Below are positions 11,622-22,121 of a DNA stretch of 64,000 nucleotides, piece by piece (positions within the stretch are counted from its first letter, which is position 1; every line of letters begins with the position of its first letter). Position numbers and translations under genes: made by a program. Under the pieces are notes generated by a model, which was given only the letters and a program-made list of their open reading frames with translations, was not told the DNA's origin and made no database searches. The DNA is from Zootoca vivipara (Eukaryota): assembly GCF_963506605.1 (NCBI RefSeq), contig NC_083294.1, forward strand, positions 37,448,001-37,512,000. The letters are read 5' to 3'.

Positions 11622-11862
11622 GTGACACGTGTGGCAGGTGGGCTCCATGGTAACCACAGAAACCCTCCTTAGCACCCACCAAGACCCCCAATACAATACA
11701 ATACAATACAATGCAATAATCTTTATTGGGATTTCAAGTTAAGACACTTCAAAATGGCAAGAGATACAATGTCTTTCTTCCTGTTTCCTATTTCCGAGAG
11801 ATTTGAATGGGGAAATCATTTCGAATCTTCAATAATAAGAGGCTGTGGGGTGAGGGAGGCCA

Positions 11863-12460
11863 GGGCCACATCCACACCATTTAAACACCTATGAAGCCAC
11901 TTTGAACACTCATGGCTTCTTACCCCAAACAATCTGGTAGCTATAGTTTGAAAAGGGTGCAGAGAGTTGTTAGGAGACACCCCCTCTGGTTCCCTCCCAG
12001 AGCTACAATTCCCAGAGTTCCCTGCCAAAAGGGAACCCTACCCCTACCCCTGACGCTAACCCTAACCCCTAACCCTCAACGAGAGCTACCATTCCCAGAG
12101 TTCCCTGGCAAGAAGGGAACCCTAACCCTGATGCTATGTCTAACCCTACCCCTGTCCCTTAACTAGAGCTACAATTCCCAGAGTTCCCTGGCAAGAAGGG
12201 AACCCTAACCCTGATGCTATGTCTAACTCTACCCCCGTCCCTTAACTAGAGCTACAATTCCCAGAGTTCCCTGACAAGAAGGGAACCCTAACCCTATCCC
12301 TACCCCAACCCTAACTCTAAACCTAACTCTAAACCTTAACCATCCTAACAACCCTCTGTCCCCTTAACCACCTACAGCTCCCAGAATTCCTGAGGGGAAG
12401 CCATTCCTGTTCAAAGAGTCTTCATAGCACTTCCAATGGATGGTGCGTCTAATGTGGCCT
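11863..12460. mobile_element. Harbinger-like MITE expanded by a telomere-like minisatellite
   Basis: TIR gggccacatc / aatgtggcct; body related to 6525-6670 and 53620-53790. Confidence 0.65.
12000..12345. repeat. Minisatellite (~83-bp period) with degenerate CCCTAA tracts
   Basis: aactagagctacaattcccagagttccct at 12161 and 12244, interleaved with ccctaa/ccctac. Confidence 0.9.
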
Positions 12461-12556
12461 AATGTTTCCTCCCTCATTTTCTTCTCTCTCCCCACTGCCC
12501 CATCATTTGCAATGCAGCAGAGGTCCGCCTGCAGTCTCCCTTCAAGGCTCCTTCTC

Positions 12557-13007
12557 TCAGGTGTGGCCGCAGCCTTGTCCATTGCTTGCTGCCAGTATTT
12601 CACATTCATTTCTCCGATGGAAATAGGGACGCCCTGCGGTTCTCTTCATGACTTTGAAGGTTGGACTTGGGGAAAACCTCACTGGCTCCACGCATCCCTG
12701 TAAGGCAAAGGCAAACAGGTGAGTCGGATGGCCACCATCCGAAAGGATCCCCCTCAGATTCCTCCTCTGTTTGGCTGCCGGGTAACAAACAAGGCTTCCA
12801 AGCCGGTTTGCATCCATCTCAGCCAGCGTAGCCTCACGGCATCCGCTAGCCTGAATGCAAACTCTTCCGTCAACCATCCACCAGCTGCAGCCTTGCCAGG
12901 TCCATTGCCAGACATCAACCTGCTCCAGGGATTTAATATCAGTCGCCTTCAAGTAGTGATCCCACTATCAAGTAAACTGTACTTGCCTTCTCCTTGCTCC
13001 ACAGCAT
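12557..13007 (-). CDS. Hypothetical spliced 53-aa ORF (13007-12987 + 12697-12557)
   Basis: The only exon-1 ATG joins in frame: MLWSKEK|GCVEPVRFSPSPTFKVMKRTAGRPYFHRRNECEILAASNGQGCGHT; no homology recognised. Confidence 0.2.
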
Positions 13008-13143
13008 CTAAGCACCGGGTGATTGCCTCCTTCCGCTTGCCAGCTTTCCGCCACGGGGCTGGAGACCACCAGGGCTGTGTGCCTCGGAGCTTCACTGAGC
13101 TGCTCTGGGGAGGGCAACTGCTGAGGCTTGCGCCTTGGCCCAC

Positions 13144-13150
13144 ATTTATA
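13144..13150 (-). promoter_or_regulatory. TATA box, copy 1
   Basis: TATAAAT about 30 nt upstream of an Inr-like CAGTT; CAGCTG E-boxes upstream. Confidence 0.6.
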
Positions 13151-13402
13151 CCTGTTCAGCTGCCAGATGTTTTTGTCACATCACAGTCAACCCACAGACA
13201 ATGGCAGCAGCTGGGGAGGCATCACCACCACCCCCTCAGCCCTCACAATAGTGAGCACAGCTCAGCAGCCAAAACACACCCACACCCAAGTTGGGCCAAT
13301 ATCTGCGAAGGCCACACTGGAAACCCAAGGGGGCAGGAGGGGGCCATTTTTCAGCCCAGTGGTTGCATTTCCCTCCACACAACACTAGCCAAAAGCACAT
13401 AT

Positions 13403-13561
13403 GGGACCCAATGACCAGTACAGGGTATGGTACAAATGACTTAAGTATGGTTATGGTGCTGGTTATCCTATAGGCCAAGGATGGGGTGCCTGGTGTCCAG
13501 TAGAGATTGTTGAGACTCCAACTTCCACCAGCCCCATCCCTGACATCTACGGATGAAGGGC

Positions 13562-13607
<46 letters not shown>

Positions 13608-19251: not shown

Positions 19252-19402
19252 CAGGGCTGTCTCAAGCATACCGGGCGGAGATCACTCCGGCGCCCCCACT
19301 CCGCCCCGTTTCTTGCCGCGGCTGGTGGGCGGGCACAGGGCGCAGCATGGCTCCGCCACACGGCGGCGCGCGCCACCCAGCCTACCCCTAGAGCCGGCCC
19401 TG
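19252..19402. mobile_element. CpG-rich hAT MITE
   Basis: TIR CAGGGCTGTCTC/GAGCCGGCCCTG; perfect TSD atagcaag. Confidence 0.9.
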
Positions 19403-20432
19403 ATAGCAAGCTCGAGGCTGCTTAGGCTTCTGCCAATGAAACGGTCCTCTTCTGATCTCACTACAGTGGAAAGGCACATCAGCCAGTGAGTGCTTGGTAG
19501 GCAGGGCTGAGGAGTAGACCCTTAAGTCAGGGAAACTGAGAACTTGGAATGTTTTTGTTGTTTGGTTACAAATAAAAATAAATTGGAAAAAAGATACTCA
19601 AAGAAACTGCCAGTACATAGTTCAGATAAGAGATGCAGAGAAAAAAGTAAAATGCCACAGTAGGAATGGTTTCAAAATTTCTGATTTTGGAGTGCTTTAT
19701 ATGACTTTTTGAAACTTGCAGCATTTCTTGGAGTGCTACATTGAAAGTATTACAAAAGCTGCCTGGATCAGGCCCGTGGCCCAAGTTCAGCATCTCATTC
19801 TCACAGATGCCTGTGCAAAAACTGCAAGCAGAATCTGACCACAACAGCCCCAGTGATTCTCAGAAACTGATATAGAGAAATATGCCACCTTTGAACCTGG
19901 AGGTAGTATGTAGCCATCACTTGACACATCACTGAGTTCACATGGCATCCACCTGGCTTCTTCCCCCAAAGAATTTGGGAGCTATAGTTTGGGTCATTGG
20001 GTTTGGTGCTTTTGTAACTGGATTTGTAATGGCTTTTAGTCAAATACAATAAATGATTGATTGATTGATTGATTGCTGAAAAAGTGTTTTTCTTTCCTGA
20101 GATGCTAACTTTCTCTCTTCATGTCATTCGTTGAAGAGCTTCCTGTGCAAAGATAAGGCTTGCTTTCATTGCTCTGTTCATTTGTGCTTTTGACTAGTGT
20201 TGTGTGGAGGGAAATGCAACCACTGGGCTGAAAAATGGCGCCCTCCTGCCCCCTTGGGTTTCCGGTGTGGCCTTCATAGATATTGGCCCAACTTGGGTGT
20301 GGGGTGTGTTTTGGCTGCTGAGCTGCACTCACCATTGTGAGGGCTGAGGGGGTGGTGGTAATGCCTCCCCAGCTGCTGCCATTGTCTGTGGGTTGACTGT
20401 GATGTGACAAAAACATTTGGCAGCTGAGCAGG

Positions 20433-20439
20433 TATAAAT
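20433..20439 (+). promoter_or_regulatory. TATA box, copy 2
   Basis: TATAAAT with Inr-like CAGTT at 20463; CAGCTG at 20421. Confidence 0.6.
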
Positions 20440-20575
20440 GTGGGCCAAGGCGCAAGCCTCAGCAGTTGCCCTCCCCAGAGTAGCTCAGTGAAGCTCCGAG
20501 GCACACAGCCCTGGTGGTCTCCAGCCCCGTGGCAGCAAGCTGGGAAGCAGAAGGAGGCAATCGCCAGGTGCTTGG

Positions 20576-21027
20576 ATGCTGTGGAGCAAGGAGAAGGCAA
20601 GTACAGTTTACTTGCTGGTGGGATCGCTACTTGAAGGCGACTGATATTAAAGCCCTGAAGCAGGTTGATGTCTGGCAATGGGACCTGGCAAGGCTGCAGC
20701 TGGTGGATGGTTGACAGATGAGTTAGCATTCAGGCTAGCGGATGCCGCGAGGCTATGCTGGCTGAGATGGATGCAAACTGGCTTGGAAGCCTTGTTTGTT
20801 ACCCGGCAGCCAAACAGAGGAGGAATCTGAGGGGGATCCTGTCGGATGGTGGCCATCCCACTCACTTGTTTGCCTCTGCCTTACAGGGATGCGTGGAGCC
20901 GGTGAGGTTTTCCCCAAGTCCAGCCTTCAAAGTCATGAAGAGAACCACAGGGCGTCCCTATTTCCATCGGAGAAATGAACGTGAAATACTGGCAGCAAGC
21001 AATGGAAAAGGCCGTGACCACACCTGA
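20576..21027 (+). CDS. Hypothetical spliced 53-aa ORF (20576-20596 + 20887-21027)
   Basis: MLWSKEK|GCVEPVRFSPSPAFKVMKRTTGRPYFHRRNEREILAASNGKGRDHT; differences between copies are mostly non-synonymous. Confidence 0.2.
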
Positions 21028-21124
21028 GAGAAGGAGCCTTGAAGGGAGACTGCCAGGCGGACATCTGCTGCATTACAAATGATGGGGCAGTGGGGAGAGA
21101 GAAGAAAATGAGGGAGGAAACATT

Positions 21125-21844
21125 AGGCCACATTAGGCGCACCATCCATTGGAAGTGCTATGAAGACGCTTTGAACAGGAATGGCTTCCCCTCAGGAATT
21201 CTGGGAACTGTAGGTGGTTAAGGGAACGGAGGGTTGTTAGGATGGTTAAGGATTAGGGTTAGGATTACAGTTAAGGTTAGAGTTACGGTAGGGTTAGTGT
21301 TGGGGTTGGGGCAGGGGCAGGGTTTCCTTTTCAGGGAACTCTGGGAATTGTAGCTCTAGTTAAGGGCTAAGTGTTAGCATTGGGGTTAGAGTTAGGGTTA
21401 GGGTTAGTATCAGGGTGGGGTAGGGTTAGGGTTAGGGTTCCCTTCTTGCCAGGGAACTCTGGGAATTGTAGCTCTAGTTGAGGGTTGAGGATTAGGGTTA
21501 GAGTTAGCGTCAGGGGTAGGGGTAGGGTTCCCTTCTTGTCAGGGAACTCTGGGAATTGTAGCTCTAGTTGAGGGTTGAGGATTAGGGTTAGAGTTAGCGT
21601 CAGGGGTAGGGGTAGGGTTCCCTTCTTGTCAGGGAACTCTGGGAATTGTAGCTCTAGTTGAGGGTTAGGGGTTAGGGTTGGCAGGGAACTCTGGGAATTG
21701 TAGTTCTGGGAGGGGACCGGGTGTGTGTGTGTCCTAACAACTCTCTGCACCCTTTTCAAACTATAGCTACCAGATTCTTTGGGGCAAGAAGCCATGAGTG
21801 TTCAAAGCGGCTTCATAGGGGTTGAAATGGTGTGGATGTGGCCC
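21125..21844. mobile_element. Harbinger-like MITE with a telomere-like array (90-bp period)
   Basis: TIR aggccacatt/gatgtggccc; agggaactct at 21451, 21541 and 21631; TTAGGG variants 21245-21680. Confidence 0.7.
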
Positions 21845-22121
21845 TGGCCTCCCTCACCCCACAGCCTCTTATTATTGAAGAATCGAAAGGATATCCCCAT
21901 TCAAATCTCTCGGAAACAGGAAGAAGAAAGACATTGTATCTCATGCCATTTTGAAATCTCTTAACTTGAAATGCCAATAAAGGTATTTGTATTGTAATTG
22001 CATTGCATTGCATTGTATTATGATTAACATGGGAAGTTAAGGAAGATCTTAAGTCAAAGGAACCAGTTTATTTATCTCTCACAAAGGGCAAAATAAACTA
22101 ATCCCTTAACCAACAAATAAG

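What the first reader, a model, noticed from the sequence alone, without database searches (positions are those of the whole stretch)
11700..22000. Head-to-head pair of unannotated two-exon Pol II units with a GC-AG intron
Seen in both copies (13150->11700 minus, 20433->22000 plus), in correct order and spacing: E-boxes, TATAAAT, Inr-like CAGTT about 30 nt downstream, ~135-nt exon 1, AAG|GCAAGT donor, 289/290-nt intron with CTCAC branch point and pyrimidine-TTACAG acceptor, then AATAAA and TG-rich repeats. Established: GC donors otherwise match the consensus closely, as this one does. Inference: a young, amplified lncRNA or micropeptide gene that the ORF track cannot show. I recognise no homologue.
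Basis: partly seen in the sequence, partly recalled or inferred. Interest (0 to 1): 0.82.

Follow-up and report, generated by a model that had tools for sequence, protein, structure and literature searches.

The report
Duplicated spliced noncoding RNA unit, lizard
Two mirror-image copies of a small two-exon unit in a lizard genome look like a real but ordinary species-group-specific noncoding RNA gene: RNA-type contigs of a related species join at exactly the predicted unusual GC-AG intron, but no protein is kept and no expression was seen in this species.

Summary
The copies are a 94%-identical inverted duplication, so "seen twice" is not independent evidence. A third, truncated copy lies at 9886-10336.

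Independent support comes from one run of a related species (X14, RNA by guess). Two contigs skip 290 nt at exactly 20596^20887 (GC..AG). The middle of the intron has no depth. Coverage ends just after the AATAAA. Coverage begins about 80-160 nt upstream of the predicted start, so the TATA/Inr start site is not supported.

In two raw RNA runs of the window's own species there are no reads on exon 1, the intron or the start of exon 2.

Promoter, exons and intron have diverged equally (94-95%). The 53-codon frame across the junction changed by 1 synonymous and 5 non-synonymous codons, and has no family or relative. A noncoding RNA is therefore likelier than a micropeptide.

Most of exon 2 is repeat-derived. 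Two inverted SINE-like copies predict a hairpin of roughly 170 bp around a TTAGGG-like minisatellite, and the poly(A) signal sits in a repeat tail.

Verdict: a real, low-copy, repeat-rich spliced unit, a new member of a known kind. Its function is unproven. The scan has no note of it on other DNA.

The parts
20262..20462 (+). Copy B upstream region: CAGCTG at 20370 and 20421, TATAAAT at 20433-20439. RNA-type contigs of the related species already cover from the bin 20305-20385.
   Evidence: motifs; 94.7% identical to copy A, and 20433-20462 is 100% identical. X14 depth 22.7 and 34.4 in bins 20305-20385 and 20386-20466, zero in 20062-20304.
20463..20596 (+). Its 3' end is firm and its 5' end is not shown. 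It holds the only ATG, at 20576 (MLWSKEK, phase 0 at the junction).
   Evidence: X14 depth 20.9, and the joint.
20597..20886 (+). Copy B intron, 290 nt: GCAAGT donor, CTCAC at 20861, pyrimidine tract, TTACAG acceptor.
   Evidence: joint 20594->20885 skips 290, both=3, 2 contigs, summed depth 26.7. Depth is 15 in 20629-20709, 0 in 20710-20790 and 2.3 in 20791-20871; fold not unusual (z -1.5); no Rfam match.
20887..21029 (+). Copy B exon 2, unique part, with the rest of the 53-codon frame (stop at 21025-21027).
   Evidence: 94.3% identical to copy A. X14 depth 101.6 in the first bin.
21030..21245 (+). Copy B exon 2, SINE-like repeat copy (arm 1 of the predicted hairpin).
   Evidence: nhmmer: matches 21903-21734 on the minus strand, E 8.5e-10; fainter copies at 6524-6592, 19926-19992, 10460-10507..
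21255..21679 (+). Copy B minisatellite: 90-nt unit x 2.9 (21422-21679), plus older 118-nt units. Each unit joins a repeat-core motif to degenerate TTAGGG-like runs. The sense strand is G-rich (GC skew 0.57).
   Evidence: joints 21267->21320 and 21475/6->21732 in X14 show length variants.
21725..21910 (-). Copy B exon 2, second SINE-like copy in inverted orientation (arm 2 of the predicted hairpin).
   Evidence: duplex -172.3 kcal/mol against -79.3 +- 7.3 for shuffles.
21828..22030 (+). Copy B tail module with AATAAA (21976-21981) and an (ATTGY)n simple repeat. The same module is also found on its own, shortened at the 5' end, at 9642-9837, 11081-11275, 8318-8412 and 9292-9365.
   Evidence: X14 depth 108 in 21844-21924, 8.3 in 21925-22005, 0 beyond.
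12987..13403 (-). Copy A upstream region and exon 1: TATAAAT at 13150, CAGTTGCC at 13120, exon 1 ends at 12987. Homology to copy B starts at 13403.
12698..12986 (-). Copy A intron, 289 nt, GC..AG.
   Evidence: 94.8% identical to the copy B intron.
11689..12697 (-). Copy A exon 2: unique part, SINE-like arm (12556-12340), 83-nt x 3.6 minisatellite (11999-12295), inverted arm (11798-11985), AATAAA at 11727-11722, simple repeat.
9886..10336 (+). Copy C, truncated: 150-nt module, upstream region, TATAAAT at 10215, and about 90 nt of exon 1. It is followed from 10331 by the reverse complement of 19841-20129.
20100..20261 (+). 150-nt repeat module directly upstream of units B and C (half of it upstream of A). 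It also ends three copies of another ~750-nt repeat (7909-8060, 18046-18195, 22258-22120). It is not covered by X14.

Best explanation
This is a low-copy, lizard-lineage-specific, repeat-rich long noncoding RNA unit that was copied by local segmental rearrangement. There are two full copies in divergent orientation and one truncated copy.

Shown or directly supported:
- In a related species, RNA-type contigs cover about 20305 to 22005.
- Those contigs lack the middle of the 290-nt interval, and two of them join 20596 to 20887. So a U2-type GC-AG intron is removed.
- The GC donor, rather than GT, is present in all contigs that cover it.
- Coverage stops just after the AATAAA that lies in a repeat-derived tail.

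Inferred:
- RNA polymerase II starts somewhere between about 20305 and 20463. The TATAAAT may serve a second or tissue-specific start.
- The mature RNA of about 1.2-1.4 kb is polyadenylated near 22000 and is not translated into a conserved product.
- Its 3' two thirds are built from two inverted SINE-like copies. These should pair into an imperfect hairpin of roughly 170 bp whose loop is a G-rich UUAGGG-like minisatellite. Such an RNA would be expected to be held in the nucleus, edited or diced.

All parts of the two copies have diverged at the same rate, so any function is not carried by exon sequence. The unit may be transcribed without function.
For: - Motifs in order in all copies.
- Exact junction in 2 contigs of X14, with the intron depth hole and the 3' coverage edge at the AATAAA bin.
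- Flanks 20062-20304 and 22006-22300 have zero depth in X14. These include the 150-nt module, which is repeated several times in this window. This fits RNA and not low-coverage DNA. The run's 67 Mb of contigs, longest 9.2 kb, also fits a transcriptome.
- No C>T is listed at 20598 despite depth around 350, so the GC donor is kept in the related species.
- Only 1-3 contigs per listed variant site on the core, so few copies.
- The core 20262-21029 is found only in A, B and (part) C within the 64 kb.
- The borders of homology differ between copies, as in segmental duplication.
- Uniform 94-95% identity across promoter, exons and intron.
- The 53-codon frame has 1 synonymous and 5 non-synonymous codon changes between A and B. 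Contigs of the related species add 2 more non-synonymous changes (F>L, R>W) and 1 synonymous.
- No Pfam family, no protein relatives by word search, no Rfam family.
- Hairpin prediction of -172 and -169 kcal/mol against -79 +- 7 for shuffles, in both copies.
- GC-AG junctions are enriched in lncRNAs (3.0% in human, 1.9% in mouse, against 0.8% in coding genes) and in first introns: PMC7242645.
Against: - X14 is RNA only by the tool's guess. The shorter side of the joint is 21 nt, and the run was laid at 90% likeness.
- Some contigs read on past the donor. Depth at 20601 is about 356, against 26.7 for the joined form. Contig depths are means over whole contigs and may include unrelated partial matches.
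- In the window's own species, two raw RNA runs (about 7.5 million reads each, 6% of each run, tissue unknown) gave no read on exon 1, the intron or the start of exon 2.
- One small RNA-guess run (X11) held only two perfect short contigs, at 21024-21256.
- The start of coverage lies upstream of the TATA box.
- No sign of selection on any part.
- Genome-wide copy number and a transposon library could not be consulted.
Confidence: 0.6

Rival explanations
1. The unit is a composite mobile element (SVA-like retroposon or foldback-type element), or part of one. The 290-nt skip in X14 would then be a DNA-level length variant or an intron-less retrocopy, not ongoing splicing of a host gene.
For: - Two thirds of exon 2 is repeat-derived: two SINE-like copies, a minisatellite, and a tail module with AATAAA plus a simple repeat.
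- Four further fragments share the same 3' end but are shortened at the 5' end, as LINE-mobilised copies are.
- X14 is RNA only by guess.
Against: - The core 20262-21029 has no copy outside A, B and C in 64 kb.
- The 5' borders of A, B and C differ, and C ends in a fold-back junction. That is typical of segmental rearrangement and not of transposition.
- The 290-nt interval has no terminal inverted repeats, no tail and only a 3-nt AGG overlap, but it has perfect splice signals.
- The flanks and the repeated 150-nt module are absent from X14, which argues for RNA.
- Only 1-3 contig variants are listed per variant site on the core.
- A retrocopy lacking the intron would itself imply splicing.
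Confidence: 0.13
2. The unit is not a gene of any consequence. It is a neutrally decaying duplicated segment whose promoter-like and splice-like motifs are fortuitous. It is silent in this species, and the contigs of the related species are noise, read-through or mis-laid repeats.
For: - No reads in X22 or X23 over exon 1, the intron or the start of exon 2.
- Uniform neutral-looking divergence.
- The motifs are individually common.
- The joint has a short side (21 nt), and the run was laid at 90% likeness.
Against: - The joint falls on the one predicted GC..AG pair out of 2.4 kb, and is seen in two contigs.
- Exon, intron and flank depth all follow the predicted structure, and the 3' edge matches the AATAAA.
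Confidence: 0.12
3. The unit is a micropeptide gene. The 53-codon frame MLWSKEK|GCVEPV...HT*, which spans the junction in phase 0 and is open in both copies, would be translated.
For: The frame is open in A and B and crosses the junction in phase.
Against: - 1 synonymous against 5 non-synonymous codon changes between A and B, and 2 further non-synonymous (plus 1 synonymous) in contigs of the related species.
- Poor start context (T at -3, C at +4).
- No signal peptide-like or other recognisable feature, no Pfam match, no relatives.
- Exon identity equals intron identity.
Confidence: 0.05
4. The unit is the duplicated 5' end (untranslated exon plus first coding exon) of a larger protein-coding gene or pseudogene whose further exons lie outside the unit.
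For: TATA-type promoter, a short first exon, and an ATG shortly before the junction.
Against: - X14 shows no joint leaving exon 2. The only further joints are minisatellite length variants, and coverage ends at the AATAAA.
- No relatives for the exon 2 frame.
- No recognisable coding exons were found near either copy among the larger open frames tested.
Confidence: 0.05

Closest known systems
Lineage-specific, transposon-rich vertebrate lncRNA genes (as surveyed in PMC3636048)
   Same: Short, few-exon Pol II-type unit. No conserved reading frame. Most of the last exon and the poly(A) signal come from repeats. Restricted to a narrow group of species and evolving at a neutral-looking rate.
   Different: The promoter and exon 1 could not be assigned to any repeat here. 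Expression is shown only indirectly, in a related species. The unit sits in a mosaic of local inverted and tandem duplications.
GC-AG first introns of lncRNA genes (PMC7242645)
   Same: The GC donor lies in the first (and only) intron of a noncoding unit. The intron is short (290 nt). The rest of the donor matches the consensus (AAG|GCAAGT).
   Different: That survey covers human and mouse, and nothing comparable was looked up for squamates. It reports weaker sites on average, whereas this donor is otherwise perfect.
Transcripts with inverted SINE pairs (IRAlu-type nuclear-retained or ADAR-edited RNAs) and hairpin-RNA (hpRNA) endo-siRNA genes; comparison from my own knowledge
   Same: Two inverted copies of one SINE-like repeat in the same exon, about 480 nt apart, predicted to pair over roughly 170 bp in both gene copies.
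   Different: The arms are only about 72% alike, so the stem is imperfect. No editing, retention or small RNAs were tested. hpRNA genes usually have near-perfect arms.
TERRA and interstitial telomeric-repeat transcripts; comparison from my own knowledge
   Same: The sense RNA would carry G-strand UUAGGG-like runs.
   Different: The arrays are degenerate (at most about 3 perfect units in a row) and embedded in an 83-118-nt minisatellite. The transcript is driven from a unique promoter with an intron. A subtelomeric position is not known.
SVA-type composite retroposons; comparison from my own knowledge
   Same: Composite of SINE-like pieces, a minisatellite, an AATAAA and a tail. Fragments shortened at the 5' end share the 3' end.
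   Different: The core is low-copy. The copies do not share a common 5' border, and no such family could be shown. An intron and a TATA-type upstream region are not SVA features.

Membership tests
Spliced Pol II long noncoding RNA gene | A transcript exists | tested here: inconclusive
   Related species run X14 (RNA by guess) covers about 20305-22005 at depths of 20-180. The window's own species has zero depth on exon 1, the intron and the start of exon 2 in two raw RNA runs. One small run holds only two perfect short contigs, at 21024-21256.
Spliced Pol II long noncoding RNA gene | Splice junction observed in RNA | tested here: met
   Joint 20594->20885 skips 290 nt with both=3, which fits 20596^20887. 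Seen in 2 contigs of X14, side 21 nt. Intron-middle depth is 0-2.3. Caveats: the library type is guessed, and the data are from a related species.
Spliced Pol II long noncoding RNA gene | No reading frame under purifying selection | tested here: met
   1 synonymous and 5 non-synonymous codon changes, and exon identity equals intron identity; no relatives and no Pfam family; no sense ORF in the mature RNA longer than the 53-codon junction-spanning frame, which was read by phase and not joined.
Spliced Pol II long noncoding RNA gene | Defined start site downstream of the proposed TATA box | tested here: not met
   X14 contigs cover 20305-20466 at the same depth as exon 1 (22.7 and 34.4 against 20.9), so they reach upstream of the TATAAAT at 20433. 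Contigs cannot show true 5' ends, so the start site stays open.
Spliced Pol II long noncoding RNA gene | Cleavage and polyadenylation site after AATAAA | tested here: inconclusive
   Depth falls from 108 to 8.3 to 0 across 21844-22086, with the AATAAA at 21976. No poly(A)-tailed reads were seen.
U2-type GC-AG intron | Donor AG|GCAAGT, branch point, pyrimidine tract and YAG acceptor in order | tested here: met
   In both copies: AAG|GCAAGT, CTCAC 22-26 nt before the acceptor, then a pyrimidine-rich stretch ending in TTACAG|G. The GC is kept in contigs of the related species (no C>T listed at 20598).
Transposable element family | Common termini, target-site duplications and dispersed copies | tested here: not met
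   The 5' borders are 20058 (C), 20179 (A) and open (B). The core is absent from the other 50 kb of the window. The intron has no terminal repeats or duplications. Only sub-parts (SINE-like arms, tail module, 150-nt module) behave as repeats. Genome-wide copy number and Dfam/Repbase were not available.
Micropeptide (small ORF) gene | Frame conserved with an excess of synonymous change, and relatives elsewhere | tested here: not met
   as above.
TERRA-type telomeric repeat RNA | Long UUAGGG tracts transcribed from a subtelomere toward the chromosome end | tested here: not met
   Only short degenerate runs inside a minisatellite, and the unit ends in unique and repeat sequence with an AATAAA. 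The chromosomal position is not testable here.
Hairpin RNA / inverted-SINE transcript | Inverted repeat within one transcript that pairs, and gives editing or small RNAs | tested here: inconclusive
   Pairing is predicted in both copies (-172 and -169 kcal/mol against -79 +- 7). The arms are about 72% alike. Editing and small RNAs were not tested. A single A>G at 21141 in 3 of 5 reads proves nothing.

The most novel reading that the evidence does not exclude
The units are members of a lizard-specific hairpin-RNA gene family. A spliced Pol II transcript would fold, through its two inverted SINE-like arms, into a long dsRNA stem that presents a G-rich UUAGGG-like minisatellite loop. It would be processed into small RNAs against that SINE family, or act as an interstitial TERRA-like RNA binding telomere-repeat proteins. 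Local inverted duplication would raise the dose.
Probability: 0.07. Interest if true: 0.6.

Novelty: new member of a known kind. Interest (0 to 1): 0.27.

Why it matters
It shows that a promoter, GC-AG intron and poly(A) architecture read from raw sequence alone can be confirmed by RNA-type contigs of a related species. It also adds one unannotated, repeat-built noncoding unit to a lizard genome. Biologically this is what vertebrate genomes hold in thousands: young lncRNA units whose last exon and poly(A) signal come from transposons, often with a GC-AG first intron. It would gain weight only if the inverted-SINE hairpin with its telomere-like loop proved to be processed or bound. That would link SINE control or telomere-repeat biology to a dedicated locus.

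Tried and rejected
- **Rfam.** The whole window at gathering level and the unit at E<=1 gave nothing relevant. This argues against a known intron-hosted snoRNA or miRNA, or another known RNA family.
- **Folds.** The intron and exon 1 fold no better than shuffles (z -1.5 and -1.0).
- **Antisense frames.** The long antisense open frames (236 aa over copy A, 151 + 117 aa over copy B) are not kept intact between copies. They have no Pfam family or relatives and were rejected as by-products of strand composition.
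- **Sense frame.** The frame holding the exon 2 ORF had no relatives in the word search and no Pfam match.
- **Neighbouring frames.** Ten of the larger open frames across the window gave only an RVT_1 fragment at 57456-58094 and a sub-threshold chance hit. No host gene was recognised.
- **The 238-aa frame at 7119-7832** and its relatives in the ~750-nt repeat are low-complexity and were rejected as coding.
- **Earlier notes of the scan.** Searches by place, words and sequence returned only this stretch's own notes.
- **Ends of the proposed 15.9-kb hAT cassette.** I read them but did not evaluate them.
- **Not run.** The large HMMER search and the ESM Atlas were left out. The coding reading is already disfavoured and the search is costly.
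- **Spliced model.** It was never joined for a search. Exons were translated and searched separately by reference, and the junction frame was read by phase only.
- The N run at 52785-52943 was left alone.

Full report
**Setting.** Earlier notes of this scan identify the genome as a lizard's. The window has no Rfam family at gathering level. Among the ten larger open frames tested, no recognisable protein-coding gene appeared, apart from a reverse-transcriptase fragment at 57456-58094.

- Copy B (+): CAGCTG at 20370 and 20421, TATAAAT at 20433, CAGTTGCC at 20463, AAG|GCAAGT with exon 1 ending at 20596, CTCAC at 20861, TTACAG|G with exon 2 beginning at 20887 (290-nt interval), and AATAAA at 21976 followed by an (ATTGY)n simple repeat.
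- Copy A (-) mirrors this: 13150, 13120, 12987|12986, 12698|12697 (289 nt) and 11727.

The two copies are one inverted duplication. The stretch 13403-12284 aligns with 20179-21301 at 94.3%, and the repeat-rich 3' part aligns at 83-92% down to 11689/22015. "Seen in both copies" is therefore inherited agreement, not two observations. A third copy at 9886-10336 keeps the upstream region, the TATAAAT (10215) and about 90 nt of exon 1. It then runs into the reverse complement of 19841-20129, a fold-back junction.

**Independent evidence from reads (the run search was).** I laid 19900-22300 at 90% likeness on four runs:

- X22 and X23: raw RNA runs of the window's species, about 6% of each read, tissue unknown.
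- X11: a small contig set of the same species, guessed to be RNA.
- X14: a contig set of a related species, guessed to be RNA (67 Mb of contigs, longest 9.2 kb).

X14 gives the decisive picture.

- **Depth.** It is 0 in 20062-20304 and about 21-34 over 20305-20547. It is 15 in the first part of the interval, then 0 and 2.3 in its middle and end. It is 102 at the start of exon 2 and stays substantial through exon 2. It then falls 108, 8.3, 0 across 21844-22086.
- **Joint.** Two contigs (summed depth 26.7) carry a joint from 20594 to 20885 that skips 290 nt, with 3 ambiguous letters. Shifted by two, this is exactly 20596^20887, so the skipped piece is GC...AG on the + strand.
- **Donor.** No C>T is listed at 20598 although depth there is about 350. 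The GC donor is therefore a family feature and not a late mutation.
- **Other joints.** These are minisatellite length variants only (21267->21320, 21475/6->21732). Exon 2 is not spliced onward.

Several points make RNA the likelier nature of X14. The flanks are uncovered, including the 150-nt module 20100-20261, which is repeated several times in this window. The edges are sharp. The intron shows a hole.

The caveats are these. The library type is a guess. The shorter side of the joint is 21 nt. Some contigs read past the donor into the first 30-110 nt of the interval, and depth at 20601 is about 356. Contig depths are whole-contig means and can include partial matches of unrelated abundant contigs.

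**Start site.** X14 covers 20305-20466, upstream of the TATAAAT, as deeply as exon 1. The start lies somewhere between about 20305 and 20463, or there are several.

**The window's own species.** X22 and X23 have zero depth from 20062 to 20952. They show a few reads on 20953-21357, which is mostly the SINE-like arm that begins at 21030. They also show many partial reads on a 35-nt repeat core at 21682-21716. X11 holds two perfect short contigs (21024-21196 and 21167-21256), and one variant contig that matches neither A nor B, which points to a further copy elsewhere. The units are thus silent or below about 1 TPM in those samples. A broad tissue panel was not available.

**Coding potential.** Identity between A and B is the same everywhere:

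| Segment | Identity A vs B |
|---|---|
| Upstream region | 94.7% |
| Exon 1 | 94.0% |
| Intron | 94.8% |
| ORF part of exon 2 | 94.3% |
| Next 213 nt | 96.7% |

The only ATG of exon 1 (20576, MLWSKEK) reaches the junction in phase 0. The matching frame of exon 2 runs 46 codons to a stop at 21025. I read this 53-codon frame by phase only.

Between A and B this frame has one synonymous and five non-synonymous codon changes. Contigs of the related species add F>L and R>W, plus one synonymous change. The start context is poor (T at -3, C at +4). No Pfam family and no protein relatives were found, for the sense frame or the long antisense frame. A micropeptide is therefore unlikely.

**RNA families and structure.** No Rfam family matches, even at E<=1. 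The intron and exon 1 fold no better than shuffles. A hosted snoRNA or miRNA is not indicated.

**Anatomy of exon 2.** Only 20887-21029 is unique. The rest is built as follows.

- 21030-21245 is a SINE-like repeat. Its relative lies inverted at 21725-21910 (nhmmer E 8.5e-10; about 72% alike). Fainter copies lie at 6524-6592, 10460-10507 and 19926-19992.
- Between the two arms lies a minisatellite: 90 nt x 2.9 in B and 83 nt x 3.6 in A. Its unit joins the repeat's core motif to degenerate TTAGGG-like runs, which makes the sense strand strongly G-rich (skew 0.57).
- The arms are predicted to pair at -172 (B) and -169 (A) kcal/mol, against -79 +- 7 for shuffles. That is an imperfect stem of roughly 170 bp with a loop of about 480 nt.
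- The AATAAA and simple-repeat tail belong to a 190-nt module. It also occurs alone, shortened at the 5' end, at 9642-9837, 11081-11275, 8318-8412 and 9292-9365.

**Gene or transposon?** The repeat-derived parts raise the question. Several findings argue against a transposon.

- The core 20262-21029 occurs only in A, B and C within 64 kb.
- The 5' borders of the three copies differ, and C ends in a fold-back.
- Contigs of the related species show only 1-3 variants per listed variant site on the core.
- The 290-nt interval has no terminal repeats, tail or duplication beyond the AGG shared by splice consensus.

This is the pattern of local segmental rearrangement of a low-copy unit, not of a mobile family. 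Genome-wide copy number and Dfam/Repbase could not be consulted, so a composite element is kept as a rival at 0.13.

**Mechanism (most likely, 0.6).**

- Pol II transcribes from the shared upstream region.
- The single GC-AG intron is removed.
- Cleavage follows the repeat-borne AATAAA.
- The noncoding RNA of roughly 1.2-1.4 kb folds its inverted SINE-like arms around a G-rich telomere-like loop.

Only the splice, and roughly the extent, are supported by data, and those data come from a related species. The start, the polyadenylation, the fold and any function are inferred. The uniform divergence suggests no sequence-level constraint.

**Comparison with the known.**

- GC-AG junctions are about 0.8% of junctions in coding genes but 3.0% (human) and 1.9% (mouse) in lncRNA genes. 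They favour the first intron (PMC7242645).

The unit fits this kind in every tested respect except a verified start site and expression in its own species. It is not TERRA, because it has only short degenerate runs, a unique promoter and an internal poly(A) signal. It is not shown to be an hpRNA gene.

**Verdict.**

- Observation: confirmed.
The intron and the two-exon extent hold. The TATA-driven start, the micropeptide option and expression in this species do not, or remain open.
- Novelty: an ordinary but real young noncoding unit, a new member of a known kind.
- Interest: 0.27.
- Prior record: the scan's notes list this stretch only under its own entries. It was not found before on other DNA.

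Noticed in passing
window 21030-21245 (+) and 21725-21910 (-); copy A 12556-12340 and 11798-11985: Two inverted, roughly 72%-alike copies of one SINE-like repeat within exon 2 of both units. They are predicted to pair (-172 and -169 kcal/mol against -79 +- 7 for shuffles) around the telomere-like minisatellite.
   Followed up: partly
window 9847-10611: Copy C stops in mid exon 1 at about 10333. It is followed at once by the reverse complement of 19841-20129. This is a fold-back junction, suggesting replication-based rearrangement and not transposition.
   Followed up: partly
window 9362-9924 and 10816-11364; also 8978-9291 and 8514-8845 ~ 11362-11689: Tandem duplications with a period of about 1.45 kb (91-98% identical) that carry extra copies of the AATAAA/(ATTGY)n tail module.
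   Followed up: no
window 17441-18184, 22120-22855 (inverted, 94.6%), 7493-8115 (89%): A repeat of about 750 nt present three times. Each copy ends in the same 150-nt module that precedes units B and C (20109-20261). Its open frames (up to 238 aa at 7119-7832) are low-complexity and without a Pfam family.
   Followed up: partly
window 7079-23087: Another first-reader note (s1-856576) calls this whole mosaic a hAT-bounded cassette inside a split SINE. I read both ends but did not test the claim.
   Followed up: no
window 21141: In raw RNA run X22, 3 of 5 reads show G where both genomic copies have A. This could be an allele, a third copy or A-to-I editing of the predicted hairpin arm. It needs DNA of the same animal.
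   Followed up: no
window 21682-21716 and 21721-21763: These short motifs are abundant in RNA of the window's species, with unrelated sequence on both sides. There are also reads that switch strand at 21683/21688. This is the core of a dispersed, partly palindromic repeat.
   Followed up: no
window 16892-17022: GC-box-like minisatellite (42-nt unit x 2.9, GGGGCGTG motifs) in the spacer between the two units. The neighbouring 16681-16846 recurs at 31971-32136 (87%).
   Followed up: no
window 57456-58094: Open frame with a weak reverse-transcriptase (RVT_1) match, E 3.3e-05. A decayed retroelement.
   Followed up: no
window 52785-52943: Run of 159 N (assembly gap or masked).
   Followed up: no
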